DNA of 64,000 nucleotides from Phallusia mammillata (lineage: Eukaryota): NCBI GenBank assembly GCA_965637545.1, contig OZ281496.1:8246001-8310000 (forward strand), read 5' to 3'. Shown here one piece after another: positions 16,948 to 41,825 of this stretch; the stretch's first letter is position 1; each line of letters opens with the position of its first letter. Under the pieces are notes generated by a model. The model did not search any database. It was not told where the DNA came from and saw only the letters and a list, made by a program, of their open reading frames with translations. The position numbers and the translations under genes are program-made.

Positions 16948-19900
16948 TTATCGATAAAATATCATAATTGTCGAATCCAAATCTCTCTGAGAATGAGCAT
17001 ATTCAACTGGAGTCGTTTTGTTCAACGTAGTTTCTGGCAATCCGTTCCAATCTATTTTTAAATTACAATTTTTGACAGACACAATGTTACGGTGTTAAAC
17101 AAAACAATTACTTGTAAAGTCATTGCAGTCTTCACAGTTGGAAAATCTGGATTGTTCATTCCTCCAATACACACAAACTCACTTCGCCAATCGTTCACTC
17201 TGAACAATTTACGTTTTTTTATAAAGTAATATTTAAAATAATGAATACTTCAGGTGTGACATTTAGCAGTAATTTTGTTTGGAAAAGAATCTTTTTTACA
17301 TATTGCTGGGTCACAAAGCTTTCAAATCAGACGTATTAATTTATGGTTTGTTTGGAAAAGAGTTCCAATGTCGACGCTAAGGATTTTTTGATGAGCAATT
17401 ACACTTGCAACACTTTTGTTCTGACTGTAATTTTTTGTATTGCAGTTGAACCTACGCCATTATGTTAACTACATTTTTTTTTTAAATGTAACAATATTAT
17501 AAAAGTCAGGTTGGATATTAACTTTGTTAAAGTATCACTAGATGGTATAGGCACCATAGATCTTATCGATTTAACGGATTTTGTTAACCCTTGACAAAAA
17601 AGTTTTTTTCAGTCGGTTGAAAGTACAATATATCAAAAAAAGCTTACATGAATACTGTCTATTTTAGTAATAAACCCGTTTTAGGTATATTTGTATGACA
17701 GCTGCACTAACTTAACAGCAGGACACATTGCATAGACGCTTCCATGTTTTCCATAAGCACGAAAATGAACAAAACCGGTAGGTAGAGGCTTCACACTTGG
17801 TGGCAGCATCGAGTTAACCACAGAATCGTTTCCGATCGAAAATTGAACTGGTACTGAAAGCACGTCTTCCTCATAAGAGCAATCTGGACCTTAAAAAATA
17901 AATCAGTAGGTTTGTCACCAATAAATCTAGTTATAGAATACACGCTAGAGCCAGATAGTTAAAAAAACAAACAATAAATCCAATGATTTTTAGATCAATT
18001 CAGTTATTATTGAAAAATCTTTATTAATTAACAAAAGCTTGGTAATACAACAAAGACCGTTTGCGTAACGTTGGTGGTTGCAAAACTCACAAAAATCACT
18101 TTCCGAAATTACTTCCAATATTTTGTAGGTAAAAGCGTTGACCTCTGTTTCTAATATTAAATCTCCAGTTTTCCTAAACACAGAATTAACATGACTAGCT
18201 GTTTTACTTAGTTTCAAGCGTTTTCATCACCAGTATACCTGGAAATCATTGTGTAACCAAGTAGAGTGTTGGACAACGGTGTATATATTTTCAACCCATA
18301 AAAGTATGATTTGCTAGTTGTACTAGTTTTCAATTCTAGCTTTGGGTTTCCTGATGATTTCCATGTCTATGTATAAAAGACAAGTTTATTAAAAAACTCC
18401 GTAAAATTGGTTTATCTGTCAAGTTTGGAATCGAAAATATCATTTTCTGGGCTGCGCCCCCAAAGTTAGATATCGTATATTGTTGACGAACTTTTTTGTA
18501 AGTTGAAATAAAATTTGTATTTTCAACACACGTCACATGTCTATACCCTCTGGTCAAATAAATAAGCGAATAAGTACCCGGTGATTATTGTAAAAGAAAC
18601 TTTCAATGTACCTGTGTGTTAAAAATGTAAAACATAATGTCACAGAAGCTGGCAGTTGTTGATCTGTTTCTACATGATGGTTCATAATGTAAAAAGAAAT
18701 TGTCGAGAGTGTGATTTCCTTCGTACCAAAGGATCGAAAACCATGTGGCTATAGACACCAAAATCATGGAATAATTTAAACTGGGCAATATGCAAGTGCT
18801 GCATTCACTTACCCCAAAAGAGACATATTTCAAAGAGGGATCAAAATCTCCTATAGCAAACAAGGCAAAGAATGGATGCATTTTTCGACTCGATTGCATT
18901 ATATTGTCCTGATCACATCTTTATTGTATACAGGAAAAGTAAATCACGTGGTACAACAAAAAAACATCCTACATTTCACCAACCTATGATCTAATCCGTA
19001 ATGTGCATGGTGATTAGGACACCTTGTTTTGTAATTAAATGAACAAAATAGACAATCTTGACAATATGGATGATTCGGATTATATGCTCCTCTTGCGCTA
19101 AAATCGACCTGTACAAACACATTTTTTAGTCGAACAAACATGGCAATTTTGTTAACTTACCCTCATTCCGTAACGTTCCCCGACAATTCCCTATCGTGCA
19201 GCTCATAAGCATGAGTACCATAGTCATAAAAATAGTAGTCAGAAATTAAATTTGTGAAGTCTGTAGATTTTTCCTCAAGTCTATCCAACATCGATTTTAC
19301 ATCGGGATAAAACTCTTAAATTAAAAACAAAACCGTCAACCTATTACACAGCCATAAATTGTTGGAAGTACCATTCCCTTGCTGTAATGGATAATGAAAA
19401 TTGTAAATTTTATGCAAATTCCCCCCATAATTTTGCGTAAATCCGTTCACTGATTGATATTGCAAAATACTCATCTCTCTGCTGACCTCCAGTGGTGTTA
19501 GGTTTTGAACATGACGTAAGATTATGTCTTGTTCCTAAACAAGCACAATGTTTCAAAGCGTTTCAAACTATTTTGCATTTTACAAAATTTTTTTTACATG
19601 GTATTCGAAATAAGCCTGGCTTTTAAAATCCATTTTTGTACAGGTATCAAATGTTCCAAAAGTGTTTGTGTTCATCCAATTCTAAAGTTCTGAAAATTAA
19701 AACTTAAAACAGTTTTTAACCTTTGGGCAATCTACCTTACCCAAGACTGCACTATTGTTGCTTGAAGTCAGAAACCACAAATTACTATAAGATTCTACAT
19801 AAGTAAAACTATTGTTGTTGATAGTTGCCGCGAAAATCCATCCACCACCAGCAGCTTTCATGTCAAAATAAGCCTTGACAAAATGTAAAAAAAGATAGAC

Positions 19901-22298
19901 GGATACTAATGTTTTTGGAAAAGGTTGCTCATTGTACATAAGATAATCAAACATTTATGAAATGCCTAAATGCAGTTTTGTTTCCTTATTCCGCTCACCG
20001 GAACAATTAAAGAAGTTTCAACATATACACAAGAAAAAAAATACAAAGTGCACCTTACAAAGACAAAAAGTTTGATCAGAAAAGATCTCAATGTCCATTT
20101 TGAAGCTATTTTGATTTACGAAAAACAAAAATTAAAAACGAAATCGATTATTAACCACACAAACTGTTTCTGTATAATACCTACTTCAAGCGATTTGTGT
20201 AACGATTGTATAACGTAGATTCCATCTTGAAACCCAGCATCTGTCAGTTCAACACATGAACGGGCAGAGTTAGGGAAAGTACCAAGCGGTGGTTTTATTG
20301 TCATGTGTTCTGTTGCGTTAAAAGCTGGGTGTTCAAATGTCTGCGGTCCTCCAAAGCCATCTAAAATCGTTAAGGTATGATATAACTTATTTTGAAACAG
20401 TATTTTATTTACTTACTTGGTTGTTTATAAAGAATAAATATGCCAAAAGTTAGTCCCAAAGCAGCCAGGACTCCAACCACACACACCAAAATTATAATCA
20501 CATGTAACAACTTCTGATTCTTTGGATGCTTTTCCGGGCGCATGGTAACAATTTCTGTTAAAAAAACATTAGTACATGTCGTTTCCTATCCAGGTTTGCA
20601 CCATATCTGATATCTGCCTTGATTAATACGTTTGGGAAACGTTAAACCAACAAAGGGCCAAAATCATTCTACAGCTGTTTTAACTAGATTTAAACCGAAT
20701 TCTGGTCTCCGTTATTAATTTTACCACATTGTACGCATCAATGCAGGTTAACTCACTTTTTGAAAGAAATGAAAGGTGTTGCGATTTTGACACATGCTAA
20801 ATATTATACTGGGTAAAGAAACGTTTGTCAGTTAAACCCACTGTAAACGCGATGTTTAAACGGTTGTTCTGTGTTTGCCACTTTCATATAAGCGTGGCAC
20901 ACATCGAAACATTATCGGCCAATCGTTACTACGTCATGCTGCAGTAAAGAGAAACTGCAATCGATCGTTATGGTGTGGTTAAGATTTAAAAAAACGACAC
21001 TGAGACCAACCTTACCTAATGCACTACTTTTTTGTTTGTAGTTGTTTCTCCAGTAGTAAATTTTCCATTTTTTCCGCCTTGCTTTATTTTATACGCACTT
21101 ATTGTTGTGTTATGTTTGTTCGATTTTTTGAACCTTGATTTTTATGTACATCACAGCACACCAACCAGGTTACCATTTTGTACGAAACCCCAGCCGTTAT
21201 CATGTGGTTGATTTGTTTTTACCTAGGTTTACTCAACAATATATTTGTTTTGAATATGAATTCTAGGTATAATTCAACAAATATTTGTCCACAGCAAACC
21301 AAAATATTTTTGTAATTGTCTAAAAGCCCTTGTTATAAGGTTGCACATACAAATCGCCTAAAGCCCTCATATACAGTATACATTGCTAAGTTGACTTATT
21401 TGCGCTGAATAACGTTGCAAAGTTGCGCAGCTATTGAGGACCTAATGATTGTTAATGTAAAACTATTTTGTGAACTTTCAACAAGTGAAATCAATCGTTT
21501 AAACATCACAATGCAACCACCGAATATCTCAGCATGTATTAAAGCCTGTAATATTGTGTAGTAGGATTTGAGGTTTTGTCTGTATCACTGCTGGTTTTGT
21601 CTGTAAATATTTAGGACATTAAAAGATATGAAATGTAATGCGAGTGCTTTAAATTAAACCTGATTGAGAAACTTTTGTAAGTTAAGTCGACTATGACACG
21701 CAACATTAAGTGACTGCCACTTAAAAGGTCACATGACTCACATTAGCTTGCCCTACATCAAAACAATAATGATTGTACTTTTGGCTAATCGTTACTACGT
21801 CACCCTGCAGTGTCGAGAAACTGAATCATTGTTAAAGCCGCTATGGTGTGGGTTGGATTGTAATAATCAACACTAAAATGAATCCCAATTTTTGCACTAG
21901 CACCTCGTCTGCACGAATTTTCCCCTGGTAAATTTTTCGCTTTTTTTCGTATTGCCTTTTACGCACTACTTGATATTTTATGTTTGTTCGATTTTGTAAA
22001 GCTTATTTTATGTGTACGTCACAACACGAATTAGGTGATCATTCTGCTTAAAACCCTAGCTGTTCTTGTGTAGAATTTCTTGTAAGTTTTAAAACTTGAG
22101 TTGTACACACCCTGGGATGTACTATATATATCCTGATGACGACGCCTCGAACCAGACATCTAGTTTTAGGCTGAGTTATTTCAATTTCACTGGAAAGAAT
22201 ATACCTGATTGATTTGTTTCCACTTCCGGAATGTTTTTTCGCTGAAGCTCAATAACTTCGTAAGATACAGGATCATTATTTACATAATTATTAGACAT
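16948..22298 (-). pseudogene. Type II TM split-intelectin receptor, copy A (probable pseudogene)
   Basis: Exons are collinear with copy C: first exon 22205-22298 (MSNNYVNNDPVSYEVI...), TM exon ~20418-20555, then RSC..L...G..DG, YFDM..GGGW, NWMNTNTFG, GPDC...FRAYG and IMIFYR*. Lesions: in-frame TAG at 19682-19684; exon 19161-19314 is 154 nt versus 155 in B/C; exon 17112-17199 is 88 nt versus 89; frame disrupted near 18740. Confidence 0.8.
20915..22060. repeat. Diverged ~300-bp direct duplication (~20915-21210 and ~21780-22060) in the intron after copy A exon 1
   Basis: Shared blocks aatcgttactacgtca, gagaaactg, tatggtgtgg and ttatgtttgttcgatttt. Confidence 0.65.
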
Positions 22299-27728: not shown

Positions 27729-30700
27729 TTATCGATAAAATATCATAATTGTTGAATCCAAATCTCTCTTAGCATGAGCATAATCAACTGGAATCGTTTC
27801 GTTCAACAAGGTTCCTGGTAATCCGTTCCAATCTATATTAATTAACACAAACTAAATATATTACTAAACAACTATAAAATGGTATCTTTAATTAAATCAC
27901 GCTAAATTACTGGTGAAATCATTGCAGTCATCCAAGTAGGTAGAATCCGGGTTTTTCATTCCTCCAAAACAAACAAATTCGCTTCTCCAATCGTTAACCC
28001 TAAATAAATTACGAGAATGAAATCCTGTAAATTATTAAACTAATTATTAGGTATAAAAATAAACTGTGTCAACTACGTTTTTTTTAAAACGTTTTTTTTT
28101 AACAGAAGTGTCGCAATGTCACATAGCCATTTGTTCAATATTGCTGCAGAAAACGTAAACCAAATATACAATAAACGAAACTAATAAAAAAGCTTCATAA
28201 ACTATAGTATTTAGGGATCCAACCAAGTCAAATGACGACCCATTTGGTATTCAGATCAGGGGATTGGGGTGCACCGCACTGAACGAATGGATGCACGATT
28301 GGGTGTAACAGAATAGCGATAACCTTGTTAGCGATGGGGTGCTTGGTTTAGGCACGAGTATGTCCAACTACTTACTTAACAGCAGGACACAATGCGTAGA
28401 CGCTTCCAGTTCTTCCATAAGCACGAAACTGAATAAAACCGGTCGGGAGAGGTTTTACACTTGGTGGCAGCATCGAGTTAGCCACTGAATCGTTTCCGAT
28501 AGAAAATTGAACTGGTACTGAAAGTACGTCATCATCATAATAACAATCCGGACCTGAAGCAAAAAAAAAGAAAACGTGTGAAAGCCTTTTGGTTACTGAC
28601 TGGAAATGCACCTGCGATTTTAGAACCGGATTAATCGCGTACATTTTTGATATATTCACATGAATATCACTTCATAAAAAATTGAAACAATGTGCATCAT
28701 CTGTTAGTAAAAACTTTCGTTAACAAAACAAACAATGCTTTTAGATAGCATAGGATTTTTTTACTCACAAAAGTCAGTTTCTGAAATAATTTCCAATATT
28801 TTGTAGGTAACAGCGTTGATCTCTGTTTCAGGTATCATGACACCACTTTTTCTAGAAATAAAGTCAAAAATAACAACAGAATTTCGATGTCTGTGTTAGT
28901 AATACCACTACACACTGAGCAGTGAACAACAATTTACCTTGCAATCATTGTGTAACCACAAAGTGTGTTGGATGCAGCTTCACGAATTGTCCATCCAAAA
29001 TAATAATGAGTTGAATATGTGCTGTTGTACAATTCTGTGGTTGGCATTCCAGATGGCTTCCAAATGTATGTCGTAAACATTAAAAAATAGTAAGTCCTTT
29101 AACAAACGAACTCCTAAATGCTTAAGTTTAAACAAGGGGAAAATCATACAGCTAAAAACGCAAAGACTAAATTAATTTTCTGATGGTGCAAAAAAGTTCA
29201 AAGGTGGCAAACCCAACATACCTCATTTTTAATGACGTAAAACCAAACATCACACAAGCTTGCATTCAAAGTCCCGTTCCTACATTGTGCTTCATAATGG
29301 AAAAATAAATTGTTAAAGGTGTGATTTCCGTTGTACGCAACTGTTGAATCAGTATCTGGTCGATAAGCAAGAACCTAAAATATTAAAAGATTACGTGCAT
29401 TGTTTTATTTAACAATGTACGACCGCACTATTTCCTTACCCTTAATTTGAAATAGTCGAAACAGTTGTCAAAGTTTCCCATAACAAACAAGGCAAAAAAT
29501 GGATGCATTTTTCGACTCGATTGCATCGTGTTGCCAAGATCGCATCTTTATTGTTTGGCAGTAAAGTAAATATAAGATACAACAAAAAGGCAGGATATTT
29601 TTTACCAACCTATAATCCAATCCGTACGGAGAACATTTTCGATGTGTGTAGGTGTAAATCTGTATCATCCATTTTAGTTTTTTTTTAAAAACAAAAAAAT
29701 AGAATTTCAATAAGCAAACTTACTTCCATTCCATACCTTTCACCATACAGATTATTATCATGCAACTTATCAACTTGAGAACCATAAACATAGAAATAGA
29801 AATCAGTAATTACACTTGTGATTTCTATAGACTTAGCAGCACGTCGATCCAACATCGAATATACATCGGGGTAAAAAGCTAAAAAGTAGGAATGGAAATT
29901 ATGACTTCGGACCAAACCTACACAGCTTAACTATTTGTAAATCGCTTTAAAAAAATTGACTCCTATTGCAAGTTAGTTTATGTTTGCTTTTGTATCAGTC
30001 AGAAATGCCATCCGTGAATTATAAAAATATATAAAATTCTTCCTACATTTACATTTAAAATGCTTTTTTTACATTATAAGTTTTTTTTTACAGTCAGGTT
30101 TTGTGTCAGAAGTCCTGCAGGCAATCGGTTATACCTATTTATGAAAACAAAAACCATAACAGAAAACATTTTTCTCACTAATTTTTGGTTTCAGTGAATA
30201 GTGGTGATTAAAAATTCTATGCAAATTTCCTCCATAAGTTTCTAAAAATCCATTTGCCGATTGATATTGAAGGAAACTCTGCTCTCTGCTGACTACCAGT
30301 GGTGTTTGGTTTAAAACATGACGCAGCATTATGTCTTTTCCTTGTAAATTTTCTTAGTAATAAGATCAAAACAAATGTCTTTTTACAAACAATTTTTGCC
30401 TGATATTCAAAATAAGCTTGATTTTTAAAATCTGATCTTGTACAAGTAGCAAATGTTCCAAATGTATTTGTGTTCATCCAGTTTTGGTAATCTGAAATTA
30501 AAATGGTGGTCGGTGTTTGGATATCATGCTGTAAATCTAGTTTACCGTAAACAGCTTGATCTTTGTTTGACGTCGTAAGAAACCACATATCAGCATAAGT
30601 TTCTGTAGTACTAAAATTATTGTCGCTAATAGTGGCCGCGAGAATCCATCCACCACCAGCAGCTTTCATGTCACAATAAGCCTGAGGACAAGAGAAATGG

Positions 30701-34777: not shown

Positions 34778-37700
34778 TTAGCGATAAAATATCATAATTG
34801 TTGAATCCAGGTCTCTCAGAGAATGAGCATAATCAACTGGAATCGTTTCGTTCAACAAGGTTCCTTGATATCCGTTCCAATCTACATTAAACAGAAACAC
34901 ATTTTTTAAACAAACAAATGTTGAGAAAACTATTATTTACTTGTAAAATCATTGCAGTCATCTAAATAGGGAGAATCTGGATTCTTCATTCCACCAATAC
35001 AAACAAATTCGCTTCTCCAATCTTTCACCCTAAATAAATAACAAATATTTTTGCTGCACGAATGCGTTAGTCAAAACGTCAAAGTATACAATAAGCGGTA
35101 CTCCGTTGTCGAATAGCTTCATGAACTATTGCAATCGACGACCCAACTAAATAACCACTCATTTTTAAATCGACACTTGGGAGTTTGGGTGCGCCGCACT
35201 AAACGATTGTTTAAATGCACGGATTATTCAAATATGGAAGGGTGTGATTGGAAAACATGGAGATGCCTCGTTTAACGAGAACGGTCGGTATTTGTTGCAG
35301 CTGTGCTGTAGCAACGGACTTAGCATCATGAACACCTTTTTCCAACACAGAGATGTTCACAAGTATACTTGGTATAGACCTAGTTTGGGGCAAAGATCTT
35401 TGATAGATTTTTACATTGTGTCGACTGACTTATTTTCTGATGTGTTGGACGTTCGAGTCAAACGCAGTGCTGAATTGTCAACTGATCACCACCTAGTGGT
35501 ATGTTCCTTACGATTTTGCGATCCTTGGCATAACAAGAAAATCCGTAAGTCAACCGTGGCATATAGGATCAAATGGGAGGCTTTGGAAGACAAAGAAGTA
35601 AGGAAGAAGTTTGCATCGAGCATGTCATCAAAGTTCAGACAACTTCCAGATGTATCTGAGGACATTGAGATGGAATGGGAATCATTCAAAACAGCCATAA
35701 TTTCTTCTGCTGCGGAAAGTTGCGGGCGAAAACGACTCAGAGTAACGAAGAACAAAAAGAAAACACCTTGGTGGAATGAGGATGTGAAACAAGTGATTAG
35801 TGCAAAGAAGGAGGCTTATAGGGCTTTGTTGCAACACAGGTCTTCATCTGAATTACAATCGCGTTACTCGGAAGCGCGGAGAGCTGCCACTTTAGCAGTT
35901 AAAAAGTCCAAAGAGAAATCTTGGGAGGAGTTTGGTCGACAGTTGGATTCCAACTACACATCGGCAAATAAAGTATTTTGGCAGACCATACGCCGTTTGC
36001 GTGGTAAGAGATCAAATGCCACAAGCTACATCAAAGACACAAATGGAAACATCATTCGTGAAGAAAGGGATATACTTGCACGATGGAGAGAATACTTTAA
36101 AGACCTTTTGAACCCAGTAAAGGCAACGCCAATTGATACACAGCAAATAGTCCAACCAGGAGAAGAGGAAGTCTTCACAGCAGTCGAAGTTGCAATAGCA
36201 GTACGAGGGCTAAAATCCGGAAAGGCAGCTGGTGAAGATGAAATCCGACCTGAAATGTTGAAAGCTCTTGGACGGGAAGGAATTCTGTGGTTAACACAAG
36301 TGTGTCAAGTGGCGTGGAAACTTGGCAAGACACCTAAAGACTGGCAAACGGGCGTAGTTATTCCCATTTTTAAAAAAGGCGATCGTAAGGAATGCACGAA
36401 CTACAGAGGAATATCGTTGCTTAGTTTGCCAGGAAAGGTGTATGCCAAATGCCTTGAACGAAAATGCCGAGAAATAGTGGAAACAAAACTGGAGGAGGGC
36501 CAGTGTGGTTTTCGTCCTGGTCGCAGCACTACGGACCAAATCTTCACATTGAAGCAAGTCTTCGAGAAATCATGGGAATATGCCAAAGACGTATTCGCAT
36601 GTTTCGTCGACCTTGAGAAGGCATTTGATCGGATTCCTCGAGAAAAGCTTTGGGGAGTACTACAGGAACATGGCATCAATGGCCAGCTGTTGCTGGCCAT
36701 AAAATCATTTTACAATCAGCCCGAGGTTTGTGTTCGCGTGAACGGCAAACAAACTAAACCATTCCATGTGGGGGTTGGTCTTCGGCAAGGATGTGTATTG
36801 TCACCACTCCTTTTCGTTATCTACATGAACTGGATTGACAAGTGCAGCCTAACTGATGATTGTGTCACGATTGGAAGCTTTAAAATTAGTCGTTTGCTTT
36901 TTGCAGTGATGGGAGACAAGACACCGAAATTGATTTTAGAACTGGAAAAGCAAGCTCTGTGATAAGGGCATTGCAGTTTTCGGTTGTCATGAAACGAGAA
37001 TTGTCAAAGAAGGCGAAGATGGCGATATTTAAAACCATCTTCATTCCCATACTCACTTATGGTCATGAGGCGTGGATCATGACCGAGAAGGTGCGATCAC
37101 AACTACAAGCATCTGAAATGAGGTTTTTGCGTAGGGTTGAACGGGTTACTTTACTTGACAAAGTACGTAGCTCCGAAATCCGCAAATCTCTGAGCGTCGA
37201 TCCTCTACTTCTCAAAATCGAACGATCCCAGCTGAAATGGTTTGGCCATGTTAACAGAATGCCTCAGAAAAGGCTTCCCAAACAATCTCTGTTTGCAAAA
37301 CCAAAAGGGAAGCGGCCCACTGGACGACCTCGAACTCGATGGTTAGATCAAGTTAAAAGCCTGTCCTGGAATCCCTTGGGAATTTATCCGGATGAACTGA
37401 AGGAAGTGGTGACTGACCGTGAAGTGTGGAGGCTCAATCGTGAGCTGCTGCCCCCGCGACCCTTAAAAGGATTAAGCGGGAAAGAAAAATGATGAATGAT
37501 GATGATTATTCAAATACATGAGTTATTAGCTCAAGAACCGTAATCTGGTTAGGTGCACGGTAGTAAGTTATCCACGAGTGCACCTAACTACCAATGTGTA
37601 AAAGCATTCTTACTCACTTAACAGCAGGACACATTGCGTAGACGCTCCCAGTTCTTCCATAAGCACGAAACTGAACAAAACCGGTCGGTAGAGGTTTTAC

Positions 37701-40700
37701 ACTTGGTGGCAACATCGAGTTAACCACTGAATCGTTTCCGATTGAAAATTGAACTGGTACTGAAAGCACGTCATCATCATACAAGCAACCTGGACCTGAA
37801 ACAACAAGCTTTTTCAAATTGTTGTAAAGCATAAGTTCTCAGTTGCATCAAATTATTTACTCACAAAAGTCAGTTTCTGTAATGATTTCCAATATTTTGT
37901 ACGTTGCAGCTTTAATCTCAGTTTCGGTTATTAAAACTCCATTTCTCCTACCAATTAAAATCGATTTTAGAAAAGTATTTTATTACAATGTTTGTTAGTA
38001 CAATGCCAAACCCTTCCTATTACCTTGAAATCATTGTGTAACCAAAAACTATATTTGATACAGCATTTTTAATTGACCATTCGAAAAAATAACTATTGCC
38101 GACGGGGTTGTATAAACTGATAATAGGCGTTCCAGATGATTTCCAAAGCTAAAAAGAAAAAAGTTAGAAATAAAAAAAAATACTAAGTTTTTATTAAGTT
38201 ATATCTTTTATTTATATAGGCAATCTTATAATATTTGTTTAGAAGAAAATAATGCAGGAAATATTTTCGTCTATGCTATCAAATTCAGAATTTGCAAATG
38301 TGTGTAAACTGCAGTGTAACTCAAGTAACAATTACCAAAAACAATTTTTAGTTTTTTATTGATTATCAGAAATTAATCGACAATCTTTTGGCTTTAAAAT
38401 AAATTTGAAGGTACGTATTAAAAACAATTCCAGTCATAACTGTATTATATTACCTGCGTAAACTCCGTGACTTGAAACTATCTACTGATATTAGGTAAAA
38501 CAAAGGTAAAACGTACCTCTGGATTATTGACATAAAACCAAACATCACACAAGCTGGCATATGACGTTCCATTTCTACATTGCGATTGAAAATGCAAAAA
38601 GAAATCGTTGATAGTGTGGTTTCCCTCGTAGAGAACTACTGAATCAGTTACTGGTCTTTGACTGTATAACTAAAACGAACAAAGTTTAAATGGATAATTG
38701 AAAAATGTCATAACGCAGTATAAACGTACTTCGAAATTCATGTAATCAAAACAGTGGTCAAAATTTCCGATACCAAACAAAGCAAAAAAGGGACGCATTT
38801 TTCGACTTGAACTCATTATGTTTCCAATGCCGCATCTTTTACAGTTGATTATTTAGTTAAATTTTAACAACAACAAAATTGCAATTTAAACATACGTAGC
38901 ATCCAAATCATAATACACATAACGATTATAATGATCAGAACAATCTATTTGATATTCGTATGGATAATTGCAACGATGTCTTGTGTAGAATCTGACCTGA
39001 ACAAACACTTTTGTTATAATTTCCTTGATCATATCAGAATGGCAATAGCATACCCTCATTCCGTAATTGTTTCCAAACAATTGACTATCATCCATCAAAT
39101 AAGAATGAGAACCATAGTTGTAAAAATAGTAATCAGTAATTAAACTCGTGATTTCTGTGGATTTTTTCTCAAGTCGATTCAACATTGAATTCACATCAGG
39201 ATAAAAAACTTTAAGCAAACATAAAACTTGCTTTAGTTTAGAGCGAATTAATTTACCAAAGTTGGGAAGATTCCCTGCATACGTTTTTTAGAGTTCAACC
39301 GCAGGCTAATATACACTTACTGTTAAAATACAGAAATTCATACATAATTATTTAGCGATTGGGACTTTCAACATTTATACTTTAGTGCACTTTAAAGGCA
39401 ATCAGTAATGCTGAGAGGTACATAATCTTATATTTGCAAAAGCTACATTTAAGGGTATTTCTTACCATTCTTGGAACTTATTTGATATCGAGAATTAAAC
39501 ATTTTTTGCATATTTCCTCCATAAAATTGCATAAATCCGTTCTCTGTTTGATATTGCAAAAAACTTTGCTCTCTGCTGATCTCTAGTGGTGTTTGGTTTA
39601 AAACATGACGTAACATAACATCTTTTCCCTGAAATTGATTTTTCCATTGTAAAAAATGGGTTAAGTCACTTTTTATCAATATTTGCCTGATATTCAAAAT
39701 AAGCTTGACTTTTAAAATCTGATCGTGTACAAGTAGAAAATGTTCCAAATGCGTTTGTGTTCATCCAATTTTGGTAATCTGGAATTCAAGAAGCACGTAA
39801 AATGTTTTCTTGCATTAGTACAATATAACTTACCTATAATATTATCGTTGTTGTTTGACGATGTAACAAACCACAAATCACTATAAATTTCTTCTAAACT
39901 TAAATCATTGTCGTTGATAGTTGCAGCGAGAATCCATCCACCACCACCAGCAACCATGTCACAGTAAACCTGTAAACAAAACTCGTTCGTAAGAGTACAT
40001 TTGTTATTCTAAAAGTTGCAATGATGTCATTGATGGATTGTCAGAAAAAAAAGACAGACCATCTTTTTTTACATTAAAGGCAGAATTCTCGTTAAAGGCA
40101 AAATTGTAAACAACTCTCAGACGCCAGGCCCAGTGAAGGCCTTTCACCGACTTAGCCGGTCACCAGATATTTTCCACATAGATTTTTCGGTATAACGCCA
40201 ACAATAGGCCTGGCGTGCTGTCATTTATATATGTGTGTGCCGTGATTGCTGGTGTGCATGAACGCTTCCGGGCTGGTCTGCAATCAAGTAAACATCGTCA
40301 TAAAATATAATTCCACACCTCAAACGATTTGAGTGACGGTTGTATGACGTAAATTCCATCTTTGAAGCCTGTGTCTCTCAGTTGAATACATGAACGAGCA
40401 GGATTTGGGAAAGTACCGAGCGGTGATTTTGTTGTCTCAGATTCTGTTGTGTTCAGAGTTGTTTGTCCTGTTGTCGGCGGTGCTGAGCAATACAGAAATT
40501 AAATTAAATATATCCTTTATTCATGCAAAACTACGACAACTTTGTCTAAGTGGCTCCTTCAGCAAATTTTTTATTCAGTTGTGTTTACAGTTGTTTGTCC
40601 AGTTGTCTGTGGTGCTGAGCAACAGAAACACTATTTTTAATGAAACTTTTAGTTCTACAACACTGCACTAACTTTATTTAAGTTTTCAACCTCCCGTAAT

Positions 40701-41825
40701 TATACTTGGAAAGTCGTTTATTCTTACATTTGTGTCAAAAAGAAACATATAAGACTTACATTTAGATTAAAATGTTTGATAACAGCTGACTGCATAATGG
40801 CTGGTTAATATTTTTTGGATATGTTTAAACCCAAACATTTATTTTCAGTCAAGCTTAAAGTTAAAAACGTTTACAAAAATCAGTCTGAAGTACTCGTCAG
40901 AAACTCGATTATGGTTTATGACTTACTGTGATCAGTTGCTTCGTCTAAGTTCTGAAACAATAAAACGTGCAGTTTGCAGTCAAACGCAACAAGTGTAACA
41001 AGTTAACTGCACCTGTTTTCCTGTGAAATTGAGTATCCCGAAAACTAGACCCAAAGCAGCCAGAATACCAACTGCGCACACCAAGACTACAATCCAGTTT
41101 GATGTGTTTGGTTTTGCAAAAAAAATTCTTGGACATTTTTTACCTGACTGCGTGTCGACAGTTTCTGTATAAAATAGAAGTCATTGTTTCTCTAAACGTA
41201 GCCTCTCCACCACAAAAAAACAGGAACTTTGTTGCATTAAAACCTATTGAAATAGGATTAGACTTAAAAATAAACTGTTTGAAATAAATTAACTGAGTTT
41301 GCAGGAGAAAACTGTTTTTTTTTGCGCTACAGTGGTCATAAATGATGCAACAACCGTAGTTTAAACACAGTTTAAAATATTGTTTGGTAGCACTCAACAC
41401 AGATTTAAAATGTACTGCGAGTGTTGTTTTTTTTATCAAGCATTTACAAAACAACTTACCAGAACTGTGTACAGTTTTAGGTGTTGGTGTTGTTTTAATG
41501 GATTCTTCATATACGTCTGTGGAAGATTCCACGTACACATTTGAGAAGGGCCCCTGTCGTTCTGGTTTGAAGGGGAAAAGTCACAGTAAATATTCGAGAG
41601 TAAGTATTTGTGGTTTGTGTTATGTTTCGACAAACATTTTAAATATGTTACACAGCATTTTGGACAGATGTAAACAAAAAAATTGAAGAGATTTTTTGCA
41701 AAGTTAAAAATATCCTTTAAAATATTACCTCGTTTCTTTCTGTTTGCTGCAGGCTGGTAACGACCTTGTTTGATCTCAATAGTTTCGTAGTCACCAGCAT
41801 CATTGTTCACATAAGTATGAGCCAT
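34778..41825 (-). CDS. Type II TM split-intelectin (fibrinogen-related) receptor, copy C, intact, 674 aa
   Basis: Exons 41729-41825, 41460-41561, 41013-41164, 40927-40951, 40319-40482, 39834-39969, 39687-39778, 39466-39628, 39054-39208, 38896-38996, 38730-38835, 38517-38669, 38024-38148, 37865-37947, 37618-37795, 34941-35029 and 34778-34881 splice into one open frame of 2025 nt. No signal peptide; TM is WIVVLVCAVGILAALGLVFGIL. Intelectin motifs in order: RSC..L...DG.Y, YCDM..GGGW.L.A, NW.N.N.FG, DFK...Y, L.Y....GF...GGN, GF.QFR, CIGG, C.DF, IFYR*. Confidence 0.85.
35235..37503 (+). mobile_element. 5'-truncated RTE-clade LINE (Expander/Rex3-like), antisense in an intron of copy C
   Basis: APE C-terminus plus RT (GLRQGCVLSPLLF) in 35244-36962 and RTE-type C-terminus (GRPRTRW) in 36959-37492. 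Short ATGA/GAT tail and 13-bp TSD GATTATTCAAATA (35222-35234, 37504-37516). An internal deletion near 36908 removes the catalytic FADD and shifts the frame. Confidence 0.9.

What the first reader, a model, noticed from the sequence alone, without database searches (positions are those of the whole stretch)
37865..39208. Intelectin domain split by a ~241-aa six-exon insert of unknown fold
Seen: after YQISSKNG the intelectin alignment resumes only at CPGCLYDDDVLSVPVQF. The matching human ITLN1 segments, recalled from memory, are YPVKYGEG and KCWTDNGPVIPVVY, which are contiguous. Between them lie six phase-compatible exons totalling 723 nt (FYPDV..., SSRKM.PFFALF, Y.GNHT...FFLH....CRN....S.CD, W...G...GYTMI.R, TYKILE.I.E.DFC). 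They are present in all three copies and show third-position substitutions consistent with coding. Inference: an extra domain grafted into the intelectin fold, possibly a new ligand-binding module.
Basis: partly seen in the sequence, partly recalled or inferred. Interest (0 to 1): 0.8.

Follow-up and report, generated by a model that had tools for sequence, protein, structure and literature searches.

The report
Microbe-type domain nested inside intelectin
In this sea-squirt (Phallusia mammillata) gene and at least 78 relatives, six exons place a complete extra beta-sandwich domain, related to bacterial and viral surface proteins, inside a loop of the sugar-binding intelectin domain; I found no description of this architecture.

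Summary
On the minus strand, six AG..GT exons (39208-37865; 155+101+106+153+125+83 = 723 nt) lie between the exon ending YQISSKN and the exon starting CPGCLYDDD. Their phases are compatible.

- **Family-wide:** the same six exons occur in all 30 paralogs inspected, and exon I4 has at least 78 genomic matches. Full-length Ciona RefSeq proteins have the same layout.
- **Coding:** the insert exons evolve like coding sequence (dN/dS 0.31, against 0.27 for the intelectin exons).
- **Transcribed:** in a paralog, intron-less RNA-like contigs join them D-I1-I2-I3-I4-I5-I6.
- **Split position:** human intelectin-1 has 8 residues where these proteins have about 240.
- **Origin of the insert:** it is an autonomous domain with no Pfam, NCBIfam or PHROGs model. 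It is homologous to a unit repeated 4-8 times in other ascidian secreted proteins, with identical intron positions and phases (1|0|2|0|0|2|1), and to domains of giant bacterial surface proteins and viral contigs.
- **Fold:** AlphaFold models it confidently (pLDDT 85) as a beta-sandwich, nearest to galactose-mutarotase-like supersandwiches (Z up to 8.7, borderline).
- **Untested or negative:** function is untested and the ancestral acidic motif is lost. Packing of the two intelectin halves could not be modelled. Two of the three window copies carry lesions.

The scan had already noted this family on other DNA of this genome.

The parts
41729..41825 (-). copy 1, putative exon 1: ATG and cytoplasmic tail (MAHTYVNNDAGDYETIEI...), donor in phase 1
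   Evidence: It is similar to the first exon of copy 3 and to the N-terminus of P0001.
41013..41164 (-). copy 1, transmembrane (signal-anchor) exon. Its only strong donor (CAG|gtgcag) is phase 0, but exon A needs phase 1, so the junction is unresolved.
40319..40482 (-). copy 1, exon A: Thr-rich stalk and start of the fibrinogen-like segment (ARSCIQLRD..GIYVI)
39834..39969 (-). copy 1, exon B: VYCDMVAGGGGW.. (intelectin/FReD motif)
   Evidence: weak Fibrinogen_C match.
39687..39778 (-). copy 1, exon C (YQNWMNTNAFG..), with a GC-AG intron donor
39466..39628 (-). copy 1, exon D: last exon of the intelectin N half, ending ..YQISSKN plus 1 base (phase 1)
39054..39208 (-). insert exon I1 (155 nt): N-terminal helix plus the degenerate, highly variable remnant of the DGGxDMYDxxGN motif
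38896..38996 (-). insert exon I2 (101 nt): two-cysteine loop, variable in length. Most paralogs have 29 codons.
38730..38835 (-). insert exon I3 (106 nt): SSRKM.PFFALF, corresponding to the HPF strand of the domain family
38517..38669 (-). insert exon I4 (153 nt): GNHT..FFLH..CRNG..SLCDVWFYV, with two invariant Cys. It has 78 genomic matches.
38024..38148 (-). insert exon I5 (125 nt): variable stretch followed by the conserved FGYTMIS
37865..37947 (-). insert exon I6 (83 nt): C-terminal helix (TYKILEIITETDF), ending in phase 1
37618..37795 (-). copy 1, exon E: intelectin resumes (C)PGCLYDDDVLSVPVQF...GFVQFRAYG..AMCPAV. This is the most conserved exon of the family.
36400..37490 (+). fragment of a reverse-transcriptase (LINE-like) element, antisense, inside the E-F intron of copy 1
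   Evidence: This comes from reading the sequence; it was not searched.
34941..35029 (-). copy 1, exon F (VKDWRSEFVCIGGMKNPDSPYLDDCNDFT): the region homologous to the Ca/ligand site of intelectin-1
34778..34881 (-). copy 1, last exon G (..DLDSTIMIFYR, then stop)
28769..29878 (-). copy 2, insert exons I1-I6. The exon frames are open, I2 is shortened to 16 codons, and the acceptor of I5 is AC instead of AG. The acceptor of exon D at about 30342 is AA.
18091..19314 (-). copy 3, insert exons I1-I6, with a 1-nt deletion in I1 and a frame-breaking 16-nt shortening of I4. There is also a stop in exon C and a frameshift in exon F, so this copy is a pseudogene.

Best explanation
**What the six exons are (shown).** They are coding exons for one autonomous domain of about 230 residues: an N-terminal helix, a 12-strand beta-sandwich and a C-terminal helix. 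The domain is nested in the surface loop of the intelectin domain that corresponds to residues about 193-200 of human intelectin-1. The host protein is a type II membrane protein with a cytoplasmic tail carrying tyrosines, a signal anchor, a Thr-rich stalk and a split intelectin. It belongs to a family of at least 78 genes clustered on one Phallusia contig, and the family is also present in Ciona.

**Where the domain comes from (shown).** It belongs to an unannotated family marked by DGGxDMYDxxGN ... GADGxG. That family is common in giant bacterial surface proteins and on viral contigs. In animals I found it only in ascidians, where it also forms 4-8 tandem units in secreted proteins (the LOC104266555 family).

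**How it got there (inferred).** Insert and tandem unit share all seven intron positions and phases (1|0|2|0|0|2|1). The module therefore most likely moved at the DNA level as a symmetric phase 1-1 six-exon cassette, that is, by exon shuffling. This would have happened once, before Ciona and Phallusia split. The domain itself probably entered the tunicate lineage from a microbe or virus.

**How it works (inferred, not shown).** The intelectin core is the conserved scaffold. The nested domain has lost the ancestral acidic motif and gained disulfides, and its loops carry most of the variation between paralogs. On this reading it acts as a diversified recognition or spacer head on a signalling membrane lectin.
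For: - **Exon anatomy and open frame:**
- **Conservation:** exons are conserved while introns are not. Exon I4 has 78 genomic matches, and all 30 fetched paralogs have the same layout.
- **Selection:** dN/dS is 0.31 for the insert and 0.27 for the intelectin exons.
- **Independent gene models:** my copy-1 model is collinear with Ciona RefSeq LOC100185179 over 528 residues, at 35% identity and E 7e-91. Ten Ciona paralogs were found. Phallusia database proteins CAB3262707 and CAB3257370 contain the spliced insert.
- **Transcripts:** RNA-like contigs of paralog L023 carry GT..AG joints D-I1, I1-I2, I2-I3, I3-I4, I4-I5 and I5-I6. No contig skips from D to E.
- **Split position:** two-piece match to 4WMQ and XEEL. 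Insert-less Phallusia intelectins are continuous at this site.
- **Autonomous domain:** BLAST of the insert against tandem units reaches E 5e-21, and 22 domain instances align.
- **Shared intron positions and phases:**
- **Microbial relatives:** 144 bacterial loci, E down to 3e-21 over the full domain length, lying in giant ORFs with Ig-like, lectin and type IX secretion (T9SS) tail domains. 48 viral contigs also hold it.
- **Trees:** ascidian domains form one clade and the intelectin inserts are monophyletic (99), with Ciona and Phallusia both inside.
- **Fold:** the model has pLDDT 85 and pTM 0.86.
- **Variation:** it is concentrated in I1 residues 32-49, I2 and I5 residues 6-24, while exons E and F are nearly invariant.
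Against: - The I6-E junction was not covered by any contig, and the runs are only guessed to be RNA.
- Copy 1 itself has no expression evidence; RNA-like runs hold at most 2% of its words.
- In copy 1 the junction from the TM exon to exon A lacks a phase-compatible strong donor. Copies 2 and 3 carry lesions.
- The full ectodomain model was confident only for the insert (pLDDT 55.7 overall). Packing of the two intelectin halves is therefore not shown.
- The residues invariant in microbial and repeat versions are lost in the inserts. Their variability gives dN/dS 0.55, not above 1, so it may be relaxation rather than diversifying selection.
- Canonical Phallusia intelectins have no intron at the site, so insertion into a pre-existing intron is not shown.
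- Restriction to ascidians rests on searches of limited reach. The grouping with viral contigs carries a long-branch warning.
Confidence: 0.8

Rival explanations
1. The feature is real in the family, but the copies in this window, including copy 1 at the reported coordinates, are decaying pseudogenes of a birth-and-death family. On this reading the insert here no longer makes protein.
For: - Copy 3 has a stop in exon C and frameshifts in I1, I4 and F. Copy 2 has AG>AA and AG>AC acceptor mutations.
- In copy 1 the strong donor of the TM exon is out of phase with exon A, a LINE fragment sits in an intron, and a degenerate stalk pseudo-exon lies upstream.
- RNA-like runs hold next to none of copy 1.
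- Even the expressed paralog behind P0001 ends prematurely in I6.
Against: - Copy 1 is open through 13 exons and 549 codons, with canonical sites from exon A to the stop.
- A near-identical duplicate 88 kb away is equally open over the exons compared.
- The available runs look embryonic or small, so silence there is weak evidence.
- A weak phase-1 donor exists downstream.
Confidence: 0.35
2. The six exons are an optional cassette. The main product would be an ordinary continuous intelectin, with the insert included only in minor or non-productive isoforms.
For: - The cassette is symmetric (phase 1-1, 723 nt), so skipping it would keep the frame.
- The I6-E joint was not observed.
Against: - No contig joining D to E was seen, whereas one 945-nt contig runs D-I1-I2-I3-I4-I5.
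- Ciona RefSeq models and Phallusia database proteins include the insert.
- Purifying selection on the insert equals that on the intelectin exons in about 30 paralogs.
- The insert has been kept since the Ciona/Phallusia split.
Confidence: 0.05
3. The nested domain keeps the ancestral activity of the microbial or tandem-repeat domain, presumably calcium or glycan binding through the acidic DGGxDMYD/GADG site. The receptor would then simply have two classical sugar sites.
For: - The whole domain is homologous to the microbial and tandem-repeat versions.
- The nearest folds are carbohydrate-enzyme accessory supersandwiches.
Against: - In the 9 intelectin inserts aligned, the invariant Asp, Met and Asn of the motif are replaced and GADG is deleted.
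- That stretch is the most variable part among paralogs.
- The ancestral activity is itself unknown.
Confidence: 0.08
4. The nested domain is only a structural spacer or oligomerisation piece with no ligand contact. On this reading recognition stays with the intelectin core.
For: - The intelectin C half is extremely conserved.
- The ancestral motif of the insert is lost.
Against: - By-eye alignment to intelectin-1 shows the calcium/ligand residues changed. N260 becomes R in Phallusia and D in Ciona, H263 becomes F or Y, and the E274 loop is altered (with residue names from PMC12800186).
- Variation between paralogs is concentrated in loops of the insert.
Confidence: 0.25

Closest known systems
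Intelectins / X-type lectins (human intelectin-1 4WMQ/4WMY, Xenopus XEEL 4WMO)
   Same: - Both halves of the domain align: E 2e-45 for a Ciona member, residues 96-252 and 491-605.
- The GGGW motif, the fibrinogen-like start and the C-terminal ..IMIFYR are present.
- W288 is kept.
   Different: - About 240 residues sit where intelectin-1 has 8.
- An N-terminal cytoplasmic tail and signal anchor replace the secretion signal.
- By-eye alignment shows the calcium/ligand residues N260, H263 and E274 are not conserved.
- The family has at least 78 genes.
Ascidian tandem-repeat secreted proteins (Ciona LOC104266555 XP_078491493, Phallusia CAB3263223, Clavelina LOC143469517)
   Same: - Same domain over its full length (E to 5e-21).
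- The same six-exon structure, with identical intron positions and phases.
   Different: - The units are tandem (4-8 per protein) and separated by Ser/Thr linkers; they are not nested in another domain.
- They keep the DGGxDMYDxxGN and GADGxG motifs that the intelectin inserts have lost.
Unannotated domain of giant bacterial surface proteins (Bacteroidota, Verrucomicrobiota, Cyanobacteria) and of proteins on IMG/VR viral contigs
   Same: - Homology is full-length, at 25-33% identity, with shared invariant motifs.
- No Pfam, NCBIfam or PHROGs model covers the domain in any of these proteins.
   Different: - The genes have no introns.
- The domain is embedded among Ig-like, lectin and type IX secretion tail domains, or stands alone in ORFs of about 300 aa.
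- Function is unknown there as well.
Galactose-mutarotase-like beta-supersandwich domains (N-terminal domains of GH65/GH94/GH15, C-terminal domains of polysaccharide lyases, YidC P1)
   Same: Nearly all of the top 50 structural neighbours of the model are of this fold class: Z 8.7-6.3, 137-206 residues aligned. The best ESM Atlas match is GH65, TM 0.50.
   Different: - There is no sequence similarity (3-11% identity).
- Foldseek found nothing below E 1e-3.
- Z about 8 is what models without any true match typically reach.
Other nested-domain receptors, such as the integrin alpha I domain inserted in the beta-propeller (from general knowledge, not tested here)
   Same: A complete ligand-type domain is inserted into a loop of another extracellular domain.
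   Different: The folds and lineage are unrelated. This is an analogy only.

Membership tests
Intelectin (X-type lectin) | Fibrinogen-like N-terminal segment with the GGGW motif, followed by the intelectin-specific region, detectable by sequence | tested here: met
   A Ciona family member gives E 2e-45 to 4WMQ and 5e-46 to XEEL. Copy 1 is 35% identical to that member over 528 residues. Exon-level Pfam matches to Fibrinogen_C and COLFI are weak.
Intelectin (X-type lectin) | One continuous domain of about 270 residues | tested here: not met
   The match is split: chain residues 185 and 194 of 4WMQ flank a 238-residue insert. Insert-less paralogs in the same genome are continuous at this site.
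Intelectin (X-type lectin) | Ligand-site residues: calcium ligands N260/E262/E274, H263, and the aromatic box W288/Y297 | tested here: inconclusive
   This rests on a by-eye alignment on the HMMER output. Ciona has D, Q, a shortened loop, Y, W, Y. Phallusia copy 1 has R, E, S(?), F, W, N(?). E274, W288 and Y297 are named in PMC12800186. N260, E262 and H263 are recalled from Wesener et al. 2015, which could not be read here.
Intelectin (X-type lectin) | Secreted soluble oligomer | tested here: not met
   A hydrophobic signal-anchor exon preceded by a cytoplasmic tail is present in copies 1-3 and in the Ciona and Phallusia proteins. Topology is predicted from sequence only.
DGGxDMYD-type microbial/ascidian surface domain (unnamed) | Full-length sequence homology to the domain | tested here: met
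   BLAST E to 5e-21. Alignments A2 and A3. The inserts are placed inside the ascidian clade of the domain tree.
DGGxDMYD-type microbial/ascidian surface domain (unnamed) | Invariant motifs DGGxDMYDxxGN and GADGxG | tested here: not met
   The motifs are replaced or deleted in the 9 intelectin inserts aligned. The inserts form a divergent subfamily.
DGGxDMYD-type microbial/ascidian surface domain (unnamed) | Ascidian six-exon unit with phases 1|0|2|0|0|2|1 | tested here: met
   Copy 1 was compared with the unit P0003 1047-1274 in locus L111.
Galactose-mutarotase-like supersandwich fold | Structural superposition well above background | tested here: inconclusive
   Z 8.7 at rmsd 3.2 over 160 residues, with a uniform hit list, but Foldseek found nothing below E 1e-3. 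The query is a predicted model, not a solved structure.

The most novel reading that the evidence does not exclude
A domain captured from a microbe or giant virus was turned into a six-exon cassette in early ascidians. It was then shuffled into a loop of intelectin and now forms the variable recognition head of a very large, clustered family of tyrosine-signalling membrane lectins. That would make it an ascidian-specific diversified innate, or self/non-self, receptor system built on a conserved intelectin scaffold.
Probability: 0.2. Interest if true: 0.85.

Novelty: new variant of a known kind. Interest (0 to 1): 0.66.

Why it matters
Intelectins are studied as small secreted lectins that read microbial sugars. 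Here the same fold is used as a membrane-anchored scaffold that carries a second, complete domain in one of its loops. That architecture has been multiplied to about 80 genes in one chromosomal cluster in the sister group of vertebrates.

- **Domain evolution.** It is a clean, datable case of domain nesting by exon shuffling: the donor-type gene and the recipient have identical intron phases. The nested domain is otherwise found only in bacteria and viruses, as is already known for tunicate cellulose synthase.
- **A new domain family.** It brings to light a widespread microbial surface-protein domain that has no family model.
- **Testable immunology.** It offers a concrete candidate for a diversified non-immunoglobulin receptor family in ascidians. 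The conserved intelectin half can be tested against the variable nested loops by binding assays and loop swaps.

Tried and rejected
**Searches that found nothing**
- Pfam on single exons, on the full Ciona and Phallusia proteins and on 22 domain instances gave nothing for the insert.
- NCBIfam and PHROGs gave nothing.
- A profile search of Protein Data Bank sequences gave nothing.
- Foldseek against the PDB gave nothing below E 1e-3.
- The ESM Atlas search by features gave no usable hit.
- Papers: no description was found in the held library. Wesener et al. 2015 could not be read.

**Searches of limited reach**
- The exhaustive representative search used only the 49-position I4 profile. It returned just ascidian proteins plus two spurious hits, which is too short to exclude distant eukaryotic relatives.
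- The word-indexed search with the domain alignment found only Ciona fragments within its length window.
It worked with the repeat-unit alignment A4.

**Models and expression**
- The full ectodomain AlphaFold model was confident only for the insert.
- RNA evidence for copy 1 itself is absent.

**Readings considered and dropped**
- The idea that the cassette landed in a pre-existing phase-1 intron is not supported. Canonical Phallusia intelectins have no intron at the site.
- Positive selection on the variable loops is not shown (dN/dS 0.55, with regions chosen post hoc).

- My spliced copy-1 protein has no reference id, so it was analysed only inside scripts. It was not sent to the database, fold or family tools; Ciona P0004 served as proxy.
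Full report
**Organism and locus.** The window is G000:C3:8246001-8310000 of a 240-Mb genome. Database proteins that match its paralogs almost exactly are from the ascidian Phallusia mammillata. Three tandem paralogs lie on the minus strand: copy 1 at about 41825-34778, copy 2 at about 32000-27729 and copy 3 at about 22300-16948.

**Checking the observation.** I read the minus strand in three frames and aligned the three copies.
- Exon D ends at 39466 with ..YQISSKN plus one base.
- Six blocks follow, each preceded by AG and followed by GT: 39208-39054, 38996-38896, 38835-38730, 38669-38517, 38148-38024 and 37947-37865.
- Their lengths are 155, 101, 106, 153, 125 and 83 nt, which sum to 723. 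The junction phases are 1|0|2|0|0|2|1.
- Exon E starts at 37795 and completes a Cys codon before PGCLYDDDVLSVPVQF.
- Spliced from exon A to the stop, copy 1 gives a single open frame of 549 codons.
- Between the copies the exons align and the introns do not.

**Is it more than chance, and is it coding?**
- Exon I4 alone has 78 matches in the genome. Nearly all lie on contig C3 between 5.7 and 8.4 Mb.
- In all 30 loci fetched, the order D, I1, (I2), I3, I4, I5, I6, E is kept. An I2-type exon, usually 29 codons with two cysteines, is present in essentially all of them.
- An alignment of 25 I4 exons has 79% mean column identity with two invariant cysteines.
- Median pairwise dN/dS is 0.31 for the insert exons and 0.27 for the intelectin exons.

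**Independent gene models and transcripts.**
- A profile of I4, searched against 1.84 billion representatives, returned Phallusia proteins CAB3262707 (582 aa) and CAB3257370 (166 aa, named intelectin-1-like). Both contain the spliced insert. The search also returned Ciona proteins.
- Ciona LOC100185179 (605 aa) is collinear with my copy-1 model over 528 residues, insert included (35% identity, E 7e-91). Nine further Ciona paralogs share the insert.
- Runs guessed to be RNA hold almost nothing of copy 1 but about 27% of the words of paralog L023.
- Laying their contigs on L023 gave intron-less contigs with CT..AC ends, which are GT..AG on the gene strand. They sit at exactly the predicted boundaries: C-D, D-I1, I1-I2, I2-I3, I3-I4, I4-I5, I5-I6, E-F and F-G.
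- One 945-nt contig spans D through I5. No contig joins D to E. The I6-E joint was not covered.

**Is the intelectin domain really split?**
- The Ciona member matches human intelectin-1 (4WMQ) and Xenopus XEEL in two pieces: residues 96-252 to chain 28-185 and residues 491-605 to chain 194-306. About 238 residues therefore replace 8.
- As an in-genome control, Phallusia has dozens of insert-less, intron-poor intelectin genes. In three that I read, the sequence runs ..RYPIVSQTYSYPADNGPSPPVVFD.. through the site inside one exon.

**What the insert is.**
- No Pfam, NCBIfam or PHROGs model and no PDB sequence matches it.
- The I4 search also hit two long secreted proteins several times each: Ciona LOC104266555 (1724 aa) and its Phallusia counterpart (1914 aa). 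BLAST shows that the whole insert aligns to a unit of about 225 residues present 7-8 times in them (E to 5e-21). Clavelina has a 4-unit protein.
- The 22 aligned instances share FYxYxYD, DGGxDMYDxGN, HPF, GADGxG, CEVxF and FGYxLLS.
- In the Phallusia genome the tandem-unit genes lie at C4:18.58-18.67 Mb. For the unit P0003 1047-1274 I mapped six exons whose seven boundaries fall at the same alignment positions, and in the same phases (1|0|2|0|0|2|1), as I1-I6. This is the strongest evidence that the insert moved as a DNA cassette.

**Wider relatives.**
- A pattern from the unit alignment found 144 bacterial loci, mostly Bacteroidota but also Verrucomicrobiota, Cyanobacteria and others. They give full-length tblastn matches down to 3e-21.
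- The matches sit inside ORFs longer than 1500 aa. These carry HYDIN/ASH Ig-like, MBG, Ig_7, Laminin_G_3 and ricin-type domains, and type IX secretion tails in related metagenomic proteins. The domain itself is unannotated.
- 48 IMG/VR viral contigs, including three giant-virus bins, also encode it, as ORFs of about 300 aa or within larger proteins.
- In trees, the ascidian domains form one clade. The intelectin inserts are monophyletic (99) with Ciona and Phallusia inside, so the nesting predates their split.
- With viral sequences added, ascidians group with the viral contigs against bacteria (support 100), but with a long-branch warning.
- No other eukaryote was found, though the searches that could have found one were limited.

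**Fold.**
- AlphaFold on the domain alignment gave pLDDT 85 and pTM 0.86: a helix, twelve strands and a helix.
- Foldseek found nothing below E 1e-3.
- The exhaustive structural aligner gave Z 8.7-6.3. Almost every neighbour was a galactose-mutarotase-like supersandwich from a carbohydrate-active enzyme. The best ESM Atlas match was GH65, TM 0.50. I treat this as a fold-class lead, not as homology.
- The model of the whole ectodomain was confident only for the insert, so packing of the halves remains open.

**Clues to function.**
- The residues invariant in bacteria and in the tandem units are substituted or deleted in the intelectin inserts.
- That stretch (I1 residues 32-49), I2 and I5 residues 6-24 are the most variable positions among about 30 paralogs. 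Exons E and F are nearly invariant.
- dN/dS in those loops is 0.55, against 0.25 elsewhere. This shows relaxation or diversification, not positive selection.
- By eye, on the alignment, several calcium/ligand residues of intelectin-1 are not conserved. Residue names come from PMC12800186 and from memory.
- I therefore favour a conserved intelectin scaffold carrying a diversified nested head on a membrane receptor. This is inference.

**State of the window copies.**
- Copy 3 has a stop and three frameshifts.
- Copy 2 has two mutated acceptors.
- Copy 1 is open from exon A to the stop, but the strong donor of its TM exon is out of phase with exon A.

**Earlier notes of this scan.** They describe the same family elsewhere in this genome, including the phase-1 flanks and the bacterial and viral relatives. 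I re-derived these points independently on this window.

Noticed in passing
window 36400-37490 (+): An antisense fragment of a reverse-transcriptase (LINE-like) element lies inside the E-F intron of copy 1. It lengthens that intron to about 2.6 kb, against about 0.35-0.5 kb in copies 2 and 3.
   Followed up: no
window 30342 and 29066 (copy 2); 19689-19598, 19314-19161, 18748-18612, 17199-17112 (copy 3): Copy 2 has AA and AC where the acceptors of exons D and I5 should be AG. Copy 3 has an in-frame stop in exon C and frame-breaking deletions in I1, I4 and F. This looks like birth-and-death turnover within the cluster.
   Followed up: partly
window 41013-41164 and 40596-40621: In copy 1 the only strong donor of the TM exon is phase 0, while exon A needs phase 1; copy 2 has a good phase-1 donor there. 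A degenerate copy of the Thr-rich stalk exon, with stop codons, lies between them.
   Followed up: partly
L002 = G000:C3:8371487-8374639: A near-identical copy of copy 1 (96-100% per exon) lies about 88 kb downstream of it. It is either a very recent segmental duplication or an assembly duplicate.
   Followed up: no
window 39687 (copy 1) and 30400 (copy 2): The intron after exon C uses a GC donor (CAG|gcaaa) in copies 1 and 2. Copy 3 has GT at the same place.
   Followed up: no
exons E, F, G of about 30 paralogs (window 37795-37618, 35029-34778 and loci L003-L030): Synonymous divergence of the intelectin C half is half that of the rest of the gene (dS 0.32 against 0.64-0.69). This suggests gene conversion or extra constraint on these exons.
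   Followed up: partly
window 41729-41825, 22200-22298; P0001, P0004, P0010-P0017 N-termini: The cytoplasmic tails carry conserved tyrosine motifs (YVNND..YETIEI in Phallusia, YEQE..Y..V/I in Ciona). This is the subject of another first-reader note and was not analysed here.
   Followed up: no
L023 (G000:C3:13403347-13406499) and P0001: The transcribed paralog behind CAB3262707 ends prematurely inside I6, although its exons E, F and G are also present in spliced contigs. It is either an expressed truncated member or a frameshifted allele.
   Followed up: partly
G000:C4:18578000-18670500: A cluster of about 90 kb of tandem-unit (DGGxDMYD domain) exons lies on both strands. That is far more units than the 8 in the database protein, so there may be several genes or a very long one.
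   Followed up: partly
G000:C6:3299900-3324000; C3:27385000-27425200; C1:2776000-2907000: Separate clusters of insert-less intelectin-like genes are present. Their N half is encoded in one exon, which makes them intron-poor compared with the 13 coding exons (A to G) mapped in the split family.
   Followed up: partly
L139, L143, L122, L127, L128 (IMG/VR contigs): On phage-like viral contigs the domain fills the C-terminal 250 residues of ORFs of about 285-314 aa that have no PHROGs family. These may be small receptor-binding or surface proteins.
   Followed up: partly
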